A stretch of 63,642 nucleotides of DNA, counting the filler, from Octopus bimaculoides (Eukaryota), in the NCBI RefSeq assembly GCF_001194135.2. It is 6 parts of 4 records of this genome, joined end to end, with 100 filler letters (N's around TTAATTAATTAA, not from the genome) between each part and the next. Parts side by side here need not be neighbours in the genome. Positions count along the whole stretch, not along the records: positions 23,652 to 35,768 come from NC_068982.1; 5 more parts are not named here. One strand, 5' to 3'. Below, in pieces: positions 25,301-34,265 of the stretch. Below the pieces are notes generated by a model. The model saw only the letters and a list, made by a program, of their open reading frames with translations, was not told the origin of the DNA and did not search any database. Position numbers and translations under genes: made by a program. Positions within the stretch are counted from its first letter, which is position 1; each line of letters opens with the position of its first letter.

Positions 25301-25324
25301 ATGATATGTGCTTTCTATATGTAC
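25301..25324 (+). CDS. Candidate first coding exon of the CD225 gene (MICAFYMY, or MY from ATG 25319)
   Basis: ATG..TAC|GTGAGT strong donor in phase 0, matching the phase-0 acceptor at 25654 (329-nt intron). No homology support. Confidence 0.3.
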
Positions 25325-25653
25325 GTGAGTACGTGTGTGTCGTGCAGGCATTATTTATGTTGCTTATATCTTTTAAAATGTGTATATGTATGCATAAACA
25401 GTTACAAGTATACGCAATTGATCGATTTACGTACTTACTATGTGTTTGGTGTGTTTTGTCGGGGTTTCTGATGCTGGTACCGATATTCTGCACATATCAC
25501 ATTGTGATAACGTGCATAAAAGAAACTCCACTTTATATAACAAAAATATTTCCAATTATTGTTGTCTTCATCATCATTATCATGTCCTCCATCATCATAA
25601 TCATCACCATCCCTAGATGATTATGTTATTTCTTTGTTTTCTTCCCTTTTCAG

Positions 25654-25761
25654 ATACAAAACCAGCAACCACATGTTGAAGATAAGATAACTTCAGCAAC
25701 TCTTGTCACCCTTTTCTGCTTTCTTCCAACAGGCATGGCTGTTATTGCTTATGCAGATAAA
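25654..25761 (+). CDS. CD225/dispanin (IFITM/PRRT-like) membrane protein, exon with first hydrophobic segment
   Basis: cttccctttttcag-type acceptor; 108 nt encoding IQNQQPHVEDKITSATLVTLFCFLPTGMAVIAYADK; donor |gtatgt. LVTLFCFLPTG..IAY..K fits the CD225 consensus. Confidence 0.85.
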
Positions 25762-25820
25762 GTATGTAAAATATGGACATTTCTTGCAAGAAATTCTATT
25801 CATATGCATACATTTTATCC

Positions 25821-26330
25821 AGTGTGGCAGTGCGTTGTGAAATTTGATTCCCAAACTCATAATTCTGGGTTCAGTTCCACTGCAGCTGGGGTAAGTGTCT
25901 TCCACAATAGCCTCGTGGTAATCAAAGCCTTGTGAGTGGATTAAACAGATGGAAACTGAAAGAAGCGGAAGGAGTTGGGGTACAATAAATTTCATTAATA
26001 TTTTTATATGGTGGAAGTGGTGGTAATAGGAAGGATTAAACAGATGGAAACTGAAAGAAGCCCGACCAATATATTTACACACACACATATGAGTGAGCGT
26101 GTTTGAGTTAGAGACCCCTTTGGTCAATGTCTCTGTTTGTCAACCACCACCGTTGACAACTGGTGTTGGTGAGTTCGCGTACCCGTTACTCATCAGTTCA
26201 ACAAAAATAGAATAAGTAGCAGCTTTGAAAAATTAGACAAGTACTAGAGCTGAGTCATTCGACTAAAATCCTTAAAGGGGATGTCCCGGCAAAACTGCAG
26301 TTTGGTGACTAAAACAAATAAAAGTTAAAA
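25821..26330 (+). mobile_element. Degenerate SINE family B in the CD225 intron, with a 66-bp insert
   Basis: gggttcagttccactgc..gtaagtgtcttcc..aaagccttgtgagtggat..ggaaactgaaagaagc, with the family B 3' part downstream. Confidence 0.75.
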
Positions 26331-26940
26331 GAGAAAACAAAAATATTCATAATTTAGTAAAAAGCATAATGTAAAAATGCCATAGTTTAGTACAAAGCAT
26401 AATATAAAATGTCAGTATTTTATTTGATAAAAAGCCATGCTTTCATAAGTTTCTTACTTTATTGATATTATACTAGTGGGACTCAGAGAAATTCCCCAGT
26501 GTAAGTCAGTATAGTTGAAAATATTATGTTGTTTCCATGCTCTATTACGATGACATTATCCCATGCTCTCCATCAGTTTTTAAAAAGAGTGTGTTGTGAT
26601 TTGGAGAATTTAGCTGGTGTTTCTAACAAGTTAAATTATCTGCTAGTGGTTGTGTTGTAGATTCGATGAAGTTCCCTCATGGACACGATAAACATGTTAT
26701 TGATAGATATTGTAGAGGAAACGCAAAACATAAGGCCTTAAACAAGATCACATGAATATCATGATTGTACTAACTGTGAGCATGAACACTGGCAGGTAAT
26801 TTCCTTAGAATCACCCAGACAACTCTCTTTCCATGATTTAAAAAGATACAGTGAAATTTCACCATATAACTGACACCAGTTGTAAATATATGACAATGTT
26901 TTGCTGTTGTTGAGTTTTATTAACATACTTTATCTTCCAG

Positions 26941-27123
26941 GCAAAAATAATGGCCGGAAATGGAAATGTAGAAGGTGCAAAAGAAGCGAACGCTAACGCA
27001 GCACGATTTATCAATATATCAATTTGTGTTTGTATTTTTGGGATTATTATTTTCATCATTTTTTTCAAGTACAAGAAATTTTACAACTACAAGGGGATAT
27101 CATCATCTCTTTTAGTAAATTGA
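26941..27123 (+). CDS. CD225/dispanin, terminal exon with transmembrane helix
   Basis: Acceptor tactttatcttccag|; phase 0; AKIMAGNGNVEGAKEANANAARFINISICVCIFGIIIFIIFFKYKKFYNYKGISSSLLVN*. In frame with the previous exon. Confidence 0.85.
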   Translation, partial: AKIMAGNGNVEGAKEANANAARFINISICVCIFGIIIFIIFFKYKKFYNYKGISSSLLVN

Positions 27124-27591
27124 GAAGGTTCATATCAAATGAAGAGTGTTTTCTTTTTTTATACTCTCCTTTAATTATAATCATATAAAATATTCTTAGC
27201 AAAAAAAAATGTTTAAATGTATTGAGAACTCCAATCAACAAATGATATATTTCATAAAAAATGATATCATTTTAAATATTCTTTTCTACTCTAGGAACAA
27301 GGCCCGAAATTTGTGGGGAGGGTGACATNNNNNNNNNNNNNNNNNNNNNNNNNNNNNNNNNNNNNNNNNNNNNNNNNNNNNNNNNNNNNNNNNNNNNNNN
27401 NNNNNNNNNNNNNNNNNNNNNNNNNNNNNNNNNNNNNNNNNNNNNNNNNNNNNNNNNNNNNNNNNNNNNNNNNNNNNNNNNNNNNNNNNNNNNNNNNNNN
27501 NNNNNNNNNNNNNNNNNNNNNNNNNNNNNNNNNNNNNNNNNNNNNNNNNNNNNNNNNNNNNNNNNNNNNNNNNNNNNNNNNNNNNNNNNNN

Positions 27592-27900
27592 TTGTGAGTG
27601 TTTATTGAGCGAAAACACCTAAAGCTCCACGAGGCTCCGCAGAGGATGGTGGCGAACCCTGCTGTACTCTTTCACCACAACTTTCTCTCACTCTTTCTTC
27701 CTGTTTCTGTTGTACCTGTATTTCAAAGGGCCAGCCTTGTCACACTGTGTCACGCTGAATATCTCCGAGAACTACGTTAATGGTACACGTGTCTGTGAAG
27801 TGCTCAGCCACTTGAATGTTAATTTCACGGGCAGGCTGTTCCGTTGATCAGATCAACTGGAACCCTCGACGTCGTAAGCGACGGAGTGCCAGCAACAACA
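27592..27900 (+). mobile_element. SINE family C (shares core with 41601-41900)
   Basis: gtacctgtatttcaaagggccagccttgtcacact..gtgctcagccacttg..caactggaac, ending in (CAA)n. Confidence 0.75.
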
Positions 27901-29258
27901 ACAACTCTGATCAGGGAACTCCTCAACCCCAGCCCGATGGTAAGAACCAATAAAGGGATAAAACTATGAGAGAATAGAGATATTCCTGAACCACTTGTAC
28001 TATTCCTTCTGTCCAATTCAATCACCCAAGAAAGCATTAGGTGATGTTGTTGCATTTTGCTTTTACTTGAATGTTTTTTACCATTATCTCAGGAACTATC
28101 AAAGTTTAAAACCATTTTATAAACATAAAATGCTTCCTTGTTTTCAAAATGTTGCCTTAAAGCCAGTTATTTATTTGAGCATTAAATATTAATGTGATTC
28201 AGTTCAACATAGAGTAGACATTTGGTACACAAAAAAATAAACAGTTACACAAATGCATTCACAAATGTCGCTATTCATGTCGACACAATATTTTAGATAA
28301 TGGTAGTTATAAACGCTTAGTAGTGAAAACTGCATTCAAATGTTGACCACAAATGTAGAGGAATATTGCTCATTCTTTTCATTCATAAATATATTGGTTA
28401 ATATTTGGTTTAATATTTCTTCTAACCGTAGAGTTCACAACAAACATACAAATGAATTTATTTCCAATGTGTGTAGTGAACTTTAGCATTTGTTATTCGA
28501 CTTCAAAGCAATATCTGAAAGCAATATTTCGAACGCTACAAACCTTCCTTCCAGGGACTGCTGTTAAAAGTTAGTGCGCTTGCATAGCAGAGTTCAAGGT
28601 CAATCTATGCTAAGCGGCTTTACTCTGCATGCTTTAGCTTCGTTACTATGGCAACAGTCCGGTTACTTATTGATCAGACCTCCTATAATTTCACTGTTAT
28701 TACTACAATCCTTACCACCTCATTTACTTCTTCTCATTGCTATTATTGCTGGACACCATTATTATTTGTTGGTATTGTTATTGTCAGTAGTGTTAGCTTC
28801 GTTGCAATATGTTAGGTTATCTTCTAATCCTCGGTTGGCTCGGTGGAACTTTAGCTGTCATCCCCAACGTTGTTCCTTTTCTGTGATGGCCACAACTTGT
28901 CTTACACCTGTCGCGACATGCTTGACGCGTTGCTGACGTCATCATTGCAATTTTCGGGGCTTAGCAAATTTACGGTCGTTGGTTTAGTTGCTGATGTTGC
29001 TGAGACGCTATATAGAAGTTTGGGGGTATTGGGTCTAATAATACAAGCTGTTTGATTGGAGTGGTAGTTGACAATTTGGCCTAAAATGAGTATAATTTCC
29101 AGAAGCAGTTTCTTCTATCCAAGTACCTTAACTGAACCTTATATGTACATAGCAAAACAATAAAAGAATTGTATCAGTTGAATATTCAGTTGTTGTCTAT
29201 GTGTAAGCCATCTATGAACTAGTTCTTGCCCATGCTCATGTCTGGCAAGAAACTTGAT

Positions 29259-29459
29259 ACTTGAGACGTCATAGGTATAAATTTACTGATAAAACCGCAG
29301 TTCACACCAGTAGATAGATATATTGCCGCGAATACGGCAAGAAGTATCACTAAGTTCCTTGGATCTTGCTACTTCATTTTTCTCTCGCTAACACACTTCA
29401 CGCAACACCTACTCATCACAAAAATGGAAGTCTGTAAGTATATAGCATTGACTTTTCGT
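29259..29459 (+). promoter_or_regulatory. Copy 1 of a ~200-bp duplicated segment with TATAAAT and ATG-GAA-GTC-T|GTAAGT
   Basis: TATAAAT at 29276, ATG at 29424, donor at 29434; collinear with 32125-32318. The promoter/first-exon role is inference. Confidence 0.4.
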
Positions 29460-29898
29460 AATTCTTCATTATATACACACTACAGTATTTTTGACGGTTC
29501 AATAACTCTATTTGCGATTCACTAGCTGACGTGTTACTAGATTTTCAAATGTCCCTTCTATCAGTACAAGGATGTTAATTAAAAAGATTTTGAAATATTT
29601 TTGAATTCAGGAAGATATCTAATTATTCCATTATTACATTCCAATGTGCAGTTTCAGTTTCTATGTTAGTTAAAATACATATTAAAATTAAGAATTATGG
29701 AAATATCATTGGCAGAGTTATTGTATAACAAAGCAAAGTAGATTTCTTTCTTTGGTGTTATTTATTCTTCATTACACGTGTTTCCATTACTAATAGTTAT
29801 TACGAAGATTTCCCATTAGCAAATGAAGCGATATCTTCGATTCGACCAAAGACCTCTGGTTGGATCTGGTAGACGGAAACCTAAAGAAACCCATCGTA

Positions 29899-32124: not shown

Positions 32125-32318
32125 ACTTGAGACGTTATTGATATAAATTTACAGCAAAATATGCAGTTCACATCAATAGATATATTGCCACGTTTAAAGT
32201 AAGTAGCCTCACTAATTTCGCTGGATCTTACCATTTCATTTTTCGCTGGATAACTCTTCACATTGCAGCTACTCATCACAAATTGAAAGTCTGTAAATAT
32301 ATATCATTGACTTCTCGT
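32125..32318 (+). promoter_or_regulatory. Copy 2 of the duplicated TATA-containing segment
   Basis: TATAAAT at 32142; the position matching copy 1's ATG reads TTG-AAA-GTC-T|gtaaat; lies about 115 nt upstream of the signal-peptide ATG. Confidence 0.4.
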
Positions 32319-32526: not shown

Positions 32527-32575
32527 GTGAGTGTATTAGACAATAAAACATTAAGACAATATGACTCTCCCCAAA

Positions 32576-32700
32576 GGCGACGAGCTGAAGAATCCTTAGC
32601 CCGACGGGCGAAATGCTCAGCAGTATTTCGTCTGTCTTTACGTTCTAAGTTCAAATTCCGCCGAGGTCGACTTTGCTTTTCAACCTTTCAACCTTTCAAT
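32576..32700 (+). mobile_element. SINE family A, 3' truncated
   Basis: Head, gttcaaattccgccgaggtcgactttgc core. Confidence 0.8.
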
Positions 32701-33357: not shown

Positions 33358-33983
33358 GTAACATAAAAAACGACCCTTCATCAGTTGTCGGCTGTCTATC
33401 TACTCCTCATTTCGAGCATTGAACGACAATATGAGTCTTCGAAGACAGTCGCTCTCATAAGCACAAAAATTAAATTTGGGATTTATGGAGGGTCAAAGTT
33501 GAGAACAAAACAAGACAGTGGATACATACAAGGAAACCGAACGAAAAACCACCTCTTTTTCCTTTACTATCTCTCGTTGCCCACACATGACCATCGTCCA
33601 TCTTTCTTTTCCTCACTTGATCATCTTTCTTTACTTTCCGGGCTTTGATCATCTTTCTTTACTTTCCGGGCTGAACTAAGGACTGGTCTATCCTGTCTCT
33701 CTCTTCTATCTTTACTTTTGTCAAAGAAAATTTTTTCCAGCGTTCGCTATTTTACACTCATTCTGCTCTAACGACCCTCCATGTTTGTTTTCGTTCGGTT
33801 TCCTCGTATGACTCCACTGTCCTGTTTTTGTTCCCAGCTTTGACCCCTTCAAAAATCCCAATTTTTTTTTTTTTTGGTACTTATAGGAGCAACTGTCTTC
33901 AAAGACTCATATTGTCGTTCAATGCTCGAAATGAGAAGTAGGTAGACAGCCGACAACTGATGAAGTGTCGTTCTTTATGTTAC
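33358..33983. repeat. Long inverted repeat (arms ~33358-33550 and ~33787-33983) with an internal ~27-bp tandem duplication
   Basis: cttcatcagttgtcggctgtctatctact..catttcgagcattgaacgacaatatgagtctt is mirrored on the right arm; tgatcatctttctttactttccgggct occurs twice in the spacer. Confidence 0.85.
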
Positions 33984-34129: not shown

Positions 34130-34265
34130 CGGGCTCCTTTTCGTCACGAGGTTTCTGTTGGCCCGAAGCTATAATAGAAGACACTTGCCCAAGGTGCCAT
34201 GCAGTGGGACTGAACCCGGAACTATGTGGTTAGGAAGCAGGCTTCTTAGCATACGGCCACACCTT
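34128..34265 (-). mobile_element. SINE family B head
   Basis: agaagacacttgcccaaggtgccatgcagtgggactgaacccggaac (reverse complement of head plus CORE-like block). Confidence 0.85.

What the first reader, a model, noticed from the sequence alone, without database searches (positions are those of the whole stretch)
25301..27123. Compact cephalopod IFITM/dispanin (CD225) gene invisible to the ORF track
Seen: two phase-0 exons join to ..LVTLFCFLPTGMAVIAYADK|AKIMAGNGNVEGAKEANANAARFINISICVCIFGIIIFIIFFKYKK.., a protein of about 100 aa. Known (recalled): CD225 proteins include antiviral IFITMs and fusion regulators PRRT2/TUSC5; vertebrate IFITMs have a phase-0 intron at the equivalent AYS.K|xR position; a loop GxxxG motif (IFITM3 GDVTG) drives oligomerisation. 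Here GNVEG occupies that position, and the palmitoylation CC is reduced to CF. Inference: an IFITM-sized protein without the long PRRT N-terminus, in an animal lacking interferon; a candidate innate antiviral or membrane-fusion regulator that may be unannotated.
Basis: partly seen in the sequence, partly recalled or inferred. Interest (0 to 1): 0.75.

Follow-up and report, generated by a model that had tools for sequence, protein, structure and literature searches.

The report
Partial octopus CD225/dispanin gene in array
The two exons are real and encode a complete CD225 (dispanin) membrane domain, but they look like the 3' end of one more copy in a fast-evolving octopus gene cluster whose members all carry a proline-rich front end, not a compact IFITM-like gene.

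Summary
Joined, they give 96 aa that match Pfam CD225 over the whole profile (E 6e-11, above the curated cut-off).

The nearest relatives are 47-58% identical Octopus paralogues, which NCBI names PRRT1-like or, wrongly, annexin A7-like. At least four O. bimaculoides paralogues lie within 0.4 Mb of one chromosome record.

In the four loci where I mapped coding exons, the layout is the same:
- a 10-nt first coding exon (ATGGAAnnnn);
- a Pro/Gln/Tyr-rich exon, with PPxY in most copies;
- the TM1 exon;
- the loop+TM2 exon.

The N-terminal exon lies 2.7-20.5 kb upstream of the TM1 exon. The piece holds only 2.0 kb upstream and has no such exon, so "compact, IFITM-sized" is unsupported and probably wrong.

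A second family gene begins 2.3 kb downstream (ATG at 29424), so this is a head-to-tail array.

The GxxxG motif (GNVEG) and the loop intron are confirmed. The IFITM3 Arg85 equivalent is Lys, and only one Cys of the CC pair remains.

dN/dS against paralogues is 0.7-1.1, which fits either rapid evolution or decay. The product is absent from the protein collections searched. This is a new member of a known family, of modest interest.

The parts
25654..25761 (+). Penultimate coding exon of gene A: juxtamembrane Asp plus the first hydrophobic helix (IQNQQPHVEDKITSATLVTLFCFLPTGMAVIAYADK). It is 36 codons, phase 0 at both ends.
   Evidence: Splice sites and translation. Homologous to the third coding exon of the four Octopus paralogues whose exons I mapped, with the same phases read in L001.
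25762..26940 (+). Intron of 1179 nt (GTATGT...CAG) at the conserved dispanin loop position. It contains a SINE-like element (about 25844-25966) and a 29-nt direct repeat (25938-25966 and 26033-26061).
   Evidence: The first 56 nt are 77-86% identical to the paralogues' introns. The conserved splice site is described in PMC3282796.
26941..27123 (+). Last coding exon of gene A: cytoplasmic-loop helix with GNVEG and A-x6-A, the second hydrophobic helix, the Lys-rich tail KYKKFYNYKGISSSLLVN, and stop TGA at 27121-27123.
27124..28523 (+). 3' flank, probably 3' UTR, of gene A. It is interrupted by an assembly gap (27329-27591) and an interspersed repeat (27592-27901). Block 27906-28523 is homologous to the sequence just after the stop codon of paralogues. 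AATAAA at 28236.
29265..29282 (+). Promoter-like block of the next family gene (gene B): CRE-like GACGTCA at 29265-29271 and TATAAAT at 29276-29282. It aligns with blocks upstream of the ATG of the paralogue genes; the TATAA core is shared with three O. bimaculoides loci.
   Evidence: Function as a promoter is inferred, not tested.
29424..29433 (+). First coding mini-exon of gene B (ATGGAAGTCT, Met-Glu-Val plus 1 nt, phase 1), followed by GTAAGT. The rest of gene B lies beyond the piece.
   Evidence: Aligns with ATGGAAnnnn|GTAAGT at the CDS start of L001-L004. The motif occurs once in the piece; 0 were expected by chance.
32142..32298 (+). Decayed duplicate of the gene-B promoter and first-exon block: TATAAAT at 32142-32148, TTGAAAGTCT at 32283-32292 (initiator ATG lost), then GTAAAT.
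   Evidence: (repeats D1, D4).

Best explanation
Positions 25654-27123 hold the last two coding exons of one member ('gene A') of an octopod tandem array of CD225/dispanin genes. These are the TM1 exon and the loop+TM2 exon, which together encode the whole CD225 domain.

By analogy with every paralogue examined, the gene should also have two upstream exons, both outside the piece:
- a 10-nt first coding exon (Met-Glu-);
- an exon for a Pro/Gln/Tyr-rich cytoplasmic N-terminus, which carries PPxY motifs in most paralogues.

The product would then be a protein of roughly 115-230 aa, the range of the full-length paralogues. This is inferred.

Inferred mode of action, from the family:
- The first hydrophobic segment, kinked at Pro25, dips into or crosses the membrane and carries one Cys (C22) that could be palmitoylated.
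- A short basic loop forms a helix carrying the GxxxG motif, which mediates oligomerisation in IFITM3 and PRRT2.
- The second helix anchors the protein.
- Such proteins alter vesicle trafficking and membrane fusion, or bind partner membrane proteins.

The array evolves fast, with dN/dS about 1.

Shown here: the exons, the domain, the homology, the array context and the rates. Inferred: the missing 5' exons, expression, topology and function.
For: Exons and domain:
- Exons, phases and translation.
- Pfam CD225 at E 6.2e-11, above the cut-off, covering the full profile.

Relatives:
- Exhaustive HMMER search: the best hits are Octopus proteins at 47-58% identity. These are XP_014790937.1, A0A0L8FRR2, XP_014789606.1 and XP_052821886.1 (O. 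bimaculoides), XP_029655251.1 and XP_036367721.1 (O. sinensis), and CAI9718712.1 (O. vulgaris).
- More relatives.

Gene structure:
- Identical coding-exon layout in four loci mapped, with exon 2 to exon 3 distances of 2.7, 5.2, 6.0 and 20.5 kb.
- Intron ends and the 3' flank are homologous between the window and the paralogues, and collinear with L004 across exon 3, the intron, exon 4 and the 3' flank at 72-84%.
- No Pro/Gln-rich exon and no exon-1 motif upstream in the piece.

Array context:
- A second family gene starts at 29424, with a homologous CRE/TATA-like block.
- The same 'stop, then a few kb, then next gene' arrangement appears in L005.

Structure and motifs:
- AlphaFold2 gives helices 12-22, 24-41 and 46-86.
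- GxxxG aligns with IFITM3 G91-G95.
- The roles of GxxxG and of the family come from PMC7665892 and PMC11730294.
Against: - No transcript evidence is available.
- The 5' exons cannot be seen because the piece ends 2.0 kb upstream.
- The exact product is absent from about 15 billion predicted proteins and from the gene-position index. It may be unexpressed, or from a genome whose annotation is not in the collection.
- dN/dS is 0.67-1.07, with bootstrap intervals spanning 0.4-1.9, and exon divergence is about equal to flanking non-coding divergence. Both are what a decaying copy would show.
- An unconstrained copy would stay open 5-54% of the time, depending on the divergence assumed.
- The AlphaFold model has only moderate confidence (pLDDT 69), and Foldseek found nothing.
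- The Lys-rich C-terminal tail is atypical for the family.
Confidence: 0.7

Rival explanations
1. Young pseudogene or orphaned 3' fragment. A tandem duplication copied the last two exons, or the whole gene and the 5' part has since decayed. The open frame persists only because too little time has passed.
For: - dN/dS is about 1 against every paralogue.
- Exons are no better conserved than neighbouring introns and 3' flank.
- Simulation: 5-54% of unconstrained copies remain open, depending on the divergence assumed.
- The product is in no protein collection.
- A decayed duplicate of a promoter and first-exon block lies in the same piece at 32142-32298, so partial or decaying duplicates do occur here.
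- TE-like repeats fill much of the surroundings.
Against: - Both exons are open, with all four splice dinucleotides and both polypyrimidine tracts intact.
- All 15 positions invariant among the Octopus paralogues are kept.
- 14 of the 16 positions that are at least 90% conserved across 60 diverse homologues are kept; the two changes, Ile to Met and Ala to Val, are conservative.
- The annotated paralogues show dN/dS of 0.4-0.9 among themselves, so a high ratio is a family trait rather than a mark of this copy.
Confidence: 0.2
2. One reading: a self-contained, compact gene of about 100 aa, starting at ATG 25301 or elsewhere within the 2 kb upstream, and encoding an IFITM-like protein with no Pro-rich N-terminus.
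For: - The intron between the two CD225 exons is unusually short here, 1.18 kb against 3.3-8.9 kb in paralogues, so this copy is more compact in that part.
- ATG 25301 followed 24 nt later by GTGAGT would be in phase.
- Mammalian DSPD2 is reported to have lost its N-terminal exon (PMC3282796), so a short form has precedent.
- The 2015 O. bimaculoides model A0A0L8FRR2 is a 96-aa two-exon model.
Against: - No paralogue has an exon at the equivalent place, and homology to the closest locus starts only at 25568.
- The four paralogue loci mapped share the four-coding-exon layout, and all full-length paralogues start Met-Glu.
- The 8-codon exon is one of many possible ATG...GT combinations in AT-rich DNA, and its ATG is in a poor context.
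- A0A0L8FRR2 starts at an internal Met of the TM1 exon, so it is most likely a truncated model.
- Without the N-terminus, the protein would lack the PPxY motifs present in most relatives.
Confidence: 0.07
3. Chance open frames in repeat-rich DNA that only resemble a CD225 domain.
For: None beyond the AT-rich, repeat-rich setting.
Against: - Pfam E 6e-11 over the whole profile.
- Exon-by-exon tblastn to paralogues at E 1e-9 and 1e-6 within a 12-kb target.
- Identical splice positions and phases.
Confidence: 0.01

Closest known systems
Octopus sinensis XP_029655251.1 ('annexin A7-like', 212 aa; locus L004, CM016860.1 at 21.35 Mb) and its O. vulgaris counterpart CAI9718712.1
   Same: It is the closest locus at the DNA level. 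It is collinear with the window across the TM1 exon (81%), the intron including a shared SINE-like insertion (73-79%), the last exon (73%) and the 3' flank (78%). Splice positions and the CD225 domain are the same.
   Different: Protein identity is only about 43-50% over the domain. It has GNIAD instead of GNVEG, so no GxxxG, and no Lys-rich tail. Its 120-aa Pro/Gln/Tyr-rich N-terminal exon lies 20.5 kb upstream, and the equivalent region is not available for the window. The NCBI name reflects only the low-complexity N-terminus.
Octopus bimaculoides CD225 paralogues on CM046602.1 at 16.47-16.88 Mb: XP_014790937.1 (PRRT1B-like), XP_052821886.1, XP_014789606.1, XP_014790939.1/LOC106884205, plus A0A0L8FRR2 (not placed on a contig here)
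   Same: They are 46-58% identical in the CD225 domain. The three loci mapped exon by exon have the same layout, and phases match where read (L001). Intron ends and 3' flanks are homologous, and the arrangement is tandem.
   Different: None is the window's gene, and none of the five loci fetched contains the piece. The loop motif varies (GDIAC, GQIEE, GGRED, GNTAG). The window has Lys where the paralogues have Asn at the IFITM3 Arg85-equivalent position.
Vertebrate PRRT1/SynDIG4 (dispanin DSPD1), an AMPA-receptor auxiliary factor
   Same: It is the only solved structure matched (9zks chain M, E 1.2e-3, chain residues 221-288 covering the CD225 domain). It has a Pro-rich N-terminus encoded by an extra upstream exon, as in the Octopus paralogues (PMC3282796).
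   Different: Identity is about 31% over the domain. PRRT1 has Cys-Cys and Gly-Asp where the window has Phe-Cys and Gly-Asn. Orthology is not established, because invertebrate dispanins do not place stably in vertebrate subfamilies (PMC3282796). There is no evidence for a glutamate-receptor role here.
Human IFITM3 (dispanin DSPA)
   Same: It shares the CD225 domain, the loop intron position, the GxxxG at the same place (GDVTG against GNVEG), and an Asp before helix 1. PPxY motifs occur in the N-termini of most Octopus paralogues, as PPNY does in IFITM3 (PMC7665892).
   Different: Identity is 33% with gaps (IFITM3 sequence recalled from memory). [quoted passage not shown] Only one of the Cys71/Cys72 pair is present. 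IFITMs are two-exon genes of a clade described as vertebrate, and they are interferon-inducible. The Octopus relatives have four coding exons and a longer N-terminus.

Membership tests
CD225/dispanin superfamily (Pfam PF04505) | Profile-HMM score above Pfam's gathering threshold | tested here: met
   42.7 bits against 27.1, E 6.2e-11, profile positions 3-68 of 68.
CD225/dispanin superfamily (Pfam PF04505) | Two hydrophobic helices separated by a short basic loop | tested here: met
   Hydrophobic runs at residues 14-34 and 58-78 of the 96-aa product. AlphaFold2 gives helices 12-22/24-41 and 46-86, at moderate confidence (pLDDT 69).
CD225/dispanin superfamily (Pfam PF04505) | Conserved intron in the loop that places the two helices on separate exons (PMC3282796) | tested here: met
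   Phase-0 intron at ...YADK|AKIM.... The position is the same in four Octopus paralogue loci.
CD225/dispanin superfamily (Pfam PF04505) | Conserved residues listed in PMC3282796: Asp before helix 1, Cys-Cys in helix 1, Gly-Asp and A-x6-A in the loop, Gly in helix 2 | tested here: inconclusive
   Asp10, A49-x6-A56 and Gly67-equivalent are present. Cys-Cys is Phe-Cys (one Cys kept, C22, which is invariant in the 60-sequence alignment). Gly-Asp is Gly-Asn.
IFITM subfamily (dispanin DSPA) | Membership of the IFITM clade, described as arising within vertebrates; best matches should be IFITMs | tested here: not met
   The best matches are Octopus PRRT1-like proteins, other invertebrate CD225 proteins and bacterial CD225 proteins. 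No source-named vertebrate IFITM was among the named hits in the top 120. PMC3282796 places the origin of DSPA near the teleost radiation. No phylogeny was run.
IFITM subfamily (dispanin DSPA) | Two-exon gene with a short N-terminus | not testable with these tools
   The piece ends 2.0 kb upstream of the TM1 exon. The four paralogue loci mapped have four coding exons and a longer N-terminus, which argues against this feature.
IFITM subfamily (dispanin DSPA) | GxxxG oligomerisation motif in the loop (PMC7665892) | tested here: met
   GNVEG aligns with IFITM3 G91-D-V-T-G95. The motif is not conserved in most Octopus paralogues.
IFITM subfamily (dispanin DSPA) | [quoted passage not shown] | tested here: not met
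   The aligned residue is Lys38. The paralogues have Asn. The paper notes that a subset of CD225 proteins lack this arginine.
IFITM subfamily (dispanin DSPA) | Induction by interferon or infection, and antiviral activity | not testable with these tools
   No expression or functional data are available.
PRRT1-like (dispanin DSPD) as named by NCBI for the paralogues | Pro-rich N-terminal region encoded by an additional upstream exon | not testable with these tools
   It is absent from the 2.0 kb available upstream. It is present in the four paralogue loci mapped, 2.7-20.5 kb upstream.
PRRT1-like (dispanin DSPD) as named by NCBI for the paralogues | Closer to PRRT1 than to other vertebrate subfamilies | tested here: inconclusive
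   PRRT1 is the only PDB hit (E 1.2e-3, about 31% identity). Identity to IFITM3 is similar (33%). No phylogeny was run.

The most novel reading that the evidence does not exclude
The octopod CD225 array, including this copy, is a lineage-specific, rapidly diversifying family. Overall dN/dS is about 1, the cytoplasmic-loop segment scores 3-4 in two comparisons, and the GxxxG motif is gained and lost between copies. On this reading the family plays an IFITM-like role as a barrier to virus entry or a regulator of membrane fusion, in an animal without interferon. This copy has the IFITM3-type GxxxG and an unusual Lys-rich tail. It could be a specialised member, or even an N-terminally short one.
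Probability: 0.1. Interest if true: 0.6.

Novelty: new member of a known kind. Interest (0 to 1): 0.3.

Why it matters
CD225 proteins are small membrane proteins with large effects: IFITM3 in virus entry, PRRT2 in neurotransmitter release, PRRT1/SynDIG4 on AMPA receptors. Their invertebrate relatives are essentially unstudied.

This finding adds one apparently unannotated copy to a family already known to be multi-copy in molluscs; ten such proteins were counted in Aplysia (PMC9334734). The more useful result is the context. Octopus carries a tandem array of these genes, with a shared exon layout, homologous blocks upstream of the start codon, and protein sequences that change about as fast as neighbouring non-coding DNA. 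That pattern deserves a proper family-wide selection and expression analysis.

On its own, this locus is an ordinary, incomplete gene fragment.

Tried and rejected
- Word-indexed protein search with the 96-aa product: no hit. It also missed paralogues that share an 11-mer with the query, so it is not exhaustive. The exhaustive search was used instead.
- Exact look-up of the 57-aa ORF 26950-27123 in the gene-position index: none.
- Look-ups of isoform-X2 proteins failed, because only the longest product of a gene is indexed. This was solved for one gene through its cluster members.
- Placing the piece in a known assembly: it lies in none of the five loci fetched (L001-L005, about 220 kb of the O. 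bimaculoides and O. sinensis clusters). Only repeats and paralogous blocks match. The species is therefore undetermined. It is probably an Octopus: one repeat has 88-94% identical copies in all four O. bimaculoides loci.
- Search for further CD225 exons or an N-terminal Pro/Gln-rich exon anywhere in the piece: none.
- Rfam scan of the piece: nothing.
- Pfam on ten flanking ORFs: nothing significant.
- Foldseek against the PDB with the AlphaFold model: no matches. This is uninformative for a small helical hairpin at pLDDT 69.
- The bacterial promoter/terminator scan is irrelevant to a eukaryotic locus.
- Literature searches for an octopus CD225/IFITM expansion or for mollusc IFITM induction found nothing specific.
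- ORF-survival simulation: an open frame alone does not exclude a pseudogene.
Full report
**1. The observation**

Exon 25654-25761 follows a polypyrimidine tract and CAG, and is followed by GTATGT. Exon 26941-27123 follows TATCTTCCAG and ends in TGA at 27121-27123. Both boundaries are phase 0.

The join gives IQNQQPHVEDKITSATLVTLFCFLPTGMAVIAYADK|AKIMAGNGNVEGAKEANANAARFINISICVCIFGIIIFIIFFKYKKFYNYKGISSSLLVN, 96 aa. This matches Pfam CD225 (PF04505) at E 6.2e-11 and 42.7 bits, above the 27.1-bit cut-off, across profile positions 3-68 of 68. A tblastn of the product against the whole piece finds only these two exons. The exons are real and are not chance.

What is not in the sequence is a start:
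- The exon's frame has a stop at 25618-25620 and no in-frame ATG before the exon.
- The first in-frame Met (25735) lies inside the first helix.

**2. Relatives**

The word-indexed protein search found nothing. The exhaustive HMMER search of 1.84 billion representatives found 173 proteins at E up to 1e-3.

The best hits are all Octopus proteins, 47-58% identical over the domain:
- O. bimaculoides: XP_014790937.1 ('proline rich transmembrane protein 1B-like', 159 aa), A0A0L8FRR2 ('Interferon-induced transmembrane protein', 96 aa), XP_014789606.1 and XP_052821886.1.
- O. sinensis and O. vulgaris: 'annexin A7-like' proteins of 204-212 aa.

A profile search added XP_029658084.1 and LOC106884205. 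No protein in either collection carries the window's exons, so this product is not annotated in those sources.

All full-length relatives start Met-Glu. Most of them have a Pro/Gln/Tyr/Gly-rich N-terminus with PPxY motifs (PPGYY, PPEY, PPTY) ahead of the C-terminal CD225 domain; XP_014789606.1 has a shorter N-terminus with a Pro run and no PPxY. Other mollusc homologues (Mactra, Bulinus, Elysia) have similar N-termini.

**3. Gene structure of the relatives**

I fetched five loci and mapped the coding exons in four of them. These four share four coding exons:
- Exon 1 is ATGGAAnnnn|GTAAGT (10 nt, phase 1).
- Exon 2 encodes the N-terminal region and ends in phase 0 with ...V-I-(I/L).
- Exon 3 (33-40 codons) encodes the first helix and ends ...|GTAAGT.
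- Exon 4 encodes the loop and the second helix.

(Phases were read directly in L001; the other loci were mapped by tblastn.)

The window's two exons correspond to exons 3 and 4, with the same phases. The intron ends are also recognisably homologous. The first 56 nt of the intron are 77-86% identical, and the acceptor regions are alignable.

The distance from exon 2 to exon 3 is 2.7, 5.2, 6.0 and 20.5 kb. Exon 1 lies a further 3-18 kb upstream.

The piece holds only 2.0 kb upstream of 25654. That stretch contains no Pro/Gln-rich reading frame, no match to any paralogue N-terminus, and no copy of the exon-1 motif. So the piece cannot show the 5' part of the gene. The family precedent says it should exist further upstream.

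**4. Context: a tandem array**

Four O. bimaculoides paralogues, plus a 132-aa CD225 gene called in L003, lie between 16.47 and 16.88 Mb of CM046602.1.

In the window:
- The block 27906-28523, after an assembly gap and an inserted repeat, is 72-78% identical to the sequence just past the stop codon of paralogues.
- Further on, 29161-29517 aligns with the region around the start codon of the paralogue genes. It holds a CRE-like GACGTCA (29265-29271), TATAAAT (29276-29282) and ATGGAAGTCT|GTAAGT (29424-29439).

A second family gene, gene B, therefore begins 2.3 kb after gene A's stop and runs off the piece. A decayed copy of the same block, with ATG changed to TTG and GTAAGT changed to GTAAAT, lies 2.86 kb further on. 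Locus L005 shows the same head-to-tail pattern.

The window lies in none of the five loci, so I could not place it or name the species. One interspersed repeat (27592-27901) has 88-94% identical copies in all four O. bimaculoides loci. The closest locus in non-coding DNA is the O. sinensis 'annexin A7-like' gene. It is collinear with the window, and its intron aligns with the window across the SINE-like element.

**5. Rate of evolution**

Nei-Gojobori estimates between the window and four paralogues give dS of 0.44-0.72 and dN/dS of 0.67-1.07. Bootstrap intervals run from about 0.4 to 1.9. The annotated paralogues give 0.42-0.94 among themselves.

Against the O. sinensis locus, identities are:

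| Region | Identity |
|---|---|
| Exon 3 | 81% |
| Exon 4 | 73% |
| Introns | 64-84% |
| 3' flank | 77-78% |

Coding sequence has therefore diverged about as fast as non-coding sequence.

The loop segment gives ratios of 3-4 in two comparisons, but on roughly 15 synonymous sites, so this is only suggestive.

A simulation shows that an unconstrained copy would remain open in 5-54% of cases, depending on the divergence assumed. The open frame alone therefore does not prove function.

In favour of function:
- All splice signals are intact.
- All 15 positions invariant among the Octopus paralogues are kept.
- 14 of the 16 positions that are at least 90% conserved in a 60-sequence alignment are kept, and the two changes are conservative.

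**6. Features of the protein**

AlphaFold2 with 60 homologues gives a helix broken at Pro25 (12-22 and 24-41), a short turn at GNGN, and a long helix at 46-86. Mean pLDDT is 69. Foldseek against the PDB returned nothing. By sequence, the only solved relative is PRRT1 (9zks, E 1.2e-3).

Aligned with IFITM3 (sequence recalled from memory):
- GNVEG matches G91-G95, the oligomerisation motif of IFITM3 and PRRT2 (PMC7665892).

Against the motifs listed for dispanins (PMC3282796):
- Present: the Asp before helix 1, A-x6-A, and the Gly in helix 2.
- Changed: Cys-Cys is Phe-Cys, and Gly-Asp is Gly-Asn.

GxxxG is not conserved among the Octopus copies (GDIAC, GNIAD, GGRED, GQIEE). The 18-residue tail with four lysines is unusual for the family.

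**7. What it most likely is**

This is the 3' two exons of one more member of an octopod tandem array of CD225/dispanin genes, with its 5' exons outside the piece (confidence about 0.7).

By family analogy, the product is a small hairpin or two-pass membrane protein that oligomerises through its loop and affects vesicle trafficking, membrane fusion or partner membrane proteins. That part is inference.

Rivals:
- A young pseudogene or orphaned 3' fragment (about 0.2).
- Chance (about 0.01).

**8. Comparison and novelty**

It is a member of the CD225/dispanin superfamily: the HMM, the topology and the intron position were all tested and met.

It should not be called an IFITM. That subfamily is described as arising within vertebrates, and invertebrate dispanins resemble DSPC/DSPD (PMC3282796). 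The best hits here are not IFITMs, and the relatives have four coding exons and longer N-termini.

'PRRT1-like' is NCBI's label for the paralogues, but identity to PRRT1 (about 31%) is no higher than to IFITM3 (33%). Subfamily placement remains open.

Molluscs are already known to hold several such genes; ten were counted in Aplysia (PMC9334734). I found no paper on the octopus array.

Verdict: a new member of a known kind, and of modest interest. The array's fast evolution is the one aspect worth following up.

Noticed in passing
window 29265-29439 (+): Start of a second CD225 family gene. It has a CRE-like GACGTCA, TATAAAT, and the 10-nt first coding exon ATGGAAGTCT followed by GTAAGT. The block aligns with the start regions of four Octopus paralogue genes, and the rest of the gene lies beyond the piece.
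   Followed up: yes
window 32142-32298 (+): Decayed duplicate of that promoter and first-exon block, 2.86 kb downstream. ATG has become TTG and the donor GTAAGT has become GTAAAT. It is either a dead copy or a non-coding alternative first exon.
   Followed up: partly
window 25762-25817 and the equivalent intron starts in L001-L003: The first ~56 nt of the intron after the TM1 exon are 77-86% identical among paralogues whose coding exons are only about 65-80% identical. This may be a splicing element or an alternative exon extension.
   Followed up: partly
window 27906-28523: A block conserved at 72-78% just past the stop codon in the paralogue loci of two species, including an AATAAA at 28236. 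It is probably a shared 3' UTR, or simply part of the duplicated unit.
   Followed up: partly
window 27592-27901: Interspersed repeat next to an assembly gap. It has seven copies at 88-94% identity in the four O. bimaculoides loci fetched and none in the 48-kb O. sinensis locus. This is a weak hint about the source species.
   Followed up: partly
window 25844-25966, 32573-32689, 34144-34264: SINE-like units of about 120 nt, with many copies at 77-91% identity in every Octopus locus fetched. One sits in the CD225 intron, and the O. sinensis intron aligns with the window across it.
   Followed up: partly
window 33358-33983: Long inverted repeat with 117-nt arms (90% complementary, 392 nt apart) and a nested 41-nt pair. 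It looks like a palindromic or foldback mobile element.
   Followed up: no
window 27064-27120 (C-terminal tail of the product): The tail KYKKFYNYKGISSSLLVN is long and carries four lysines directly after the second helix, unlike the paralogues. This is odd if the C-terminus faces the lumen or outside, as it does in IFITM3.
   Followed up: no
L005 1791-1880 (O. bimaculoides CM046602.1, about 16.78 Mb): Last exon of yet another CD225 paralogue, upstream of LOC106884205 (ANTMAQNGNLEGATKANRTAKELILISLFI). It has a GxxxG like the window's, and no called gene is listed for this stretch in the look-up.
   Followed up: no
protein names of the paralogues: Several Octopus CD225 proteins are named 'annexin A7-like' or 'actin-binding protein WASF2' in public records. 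This is evidently because of their Pro/Gln/Tyr-rich N-termini; their only Pfam domain is CD225.
   Followed up: partly
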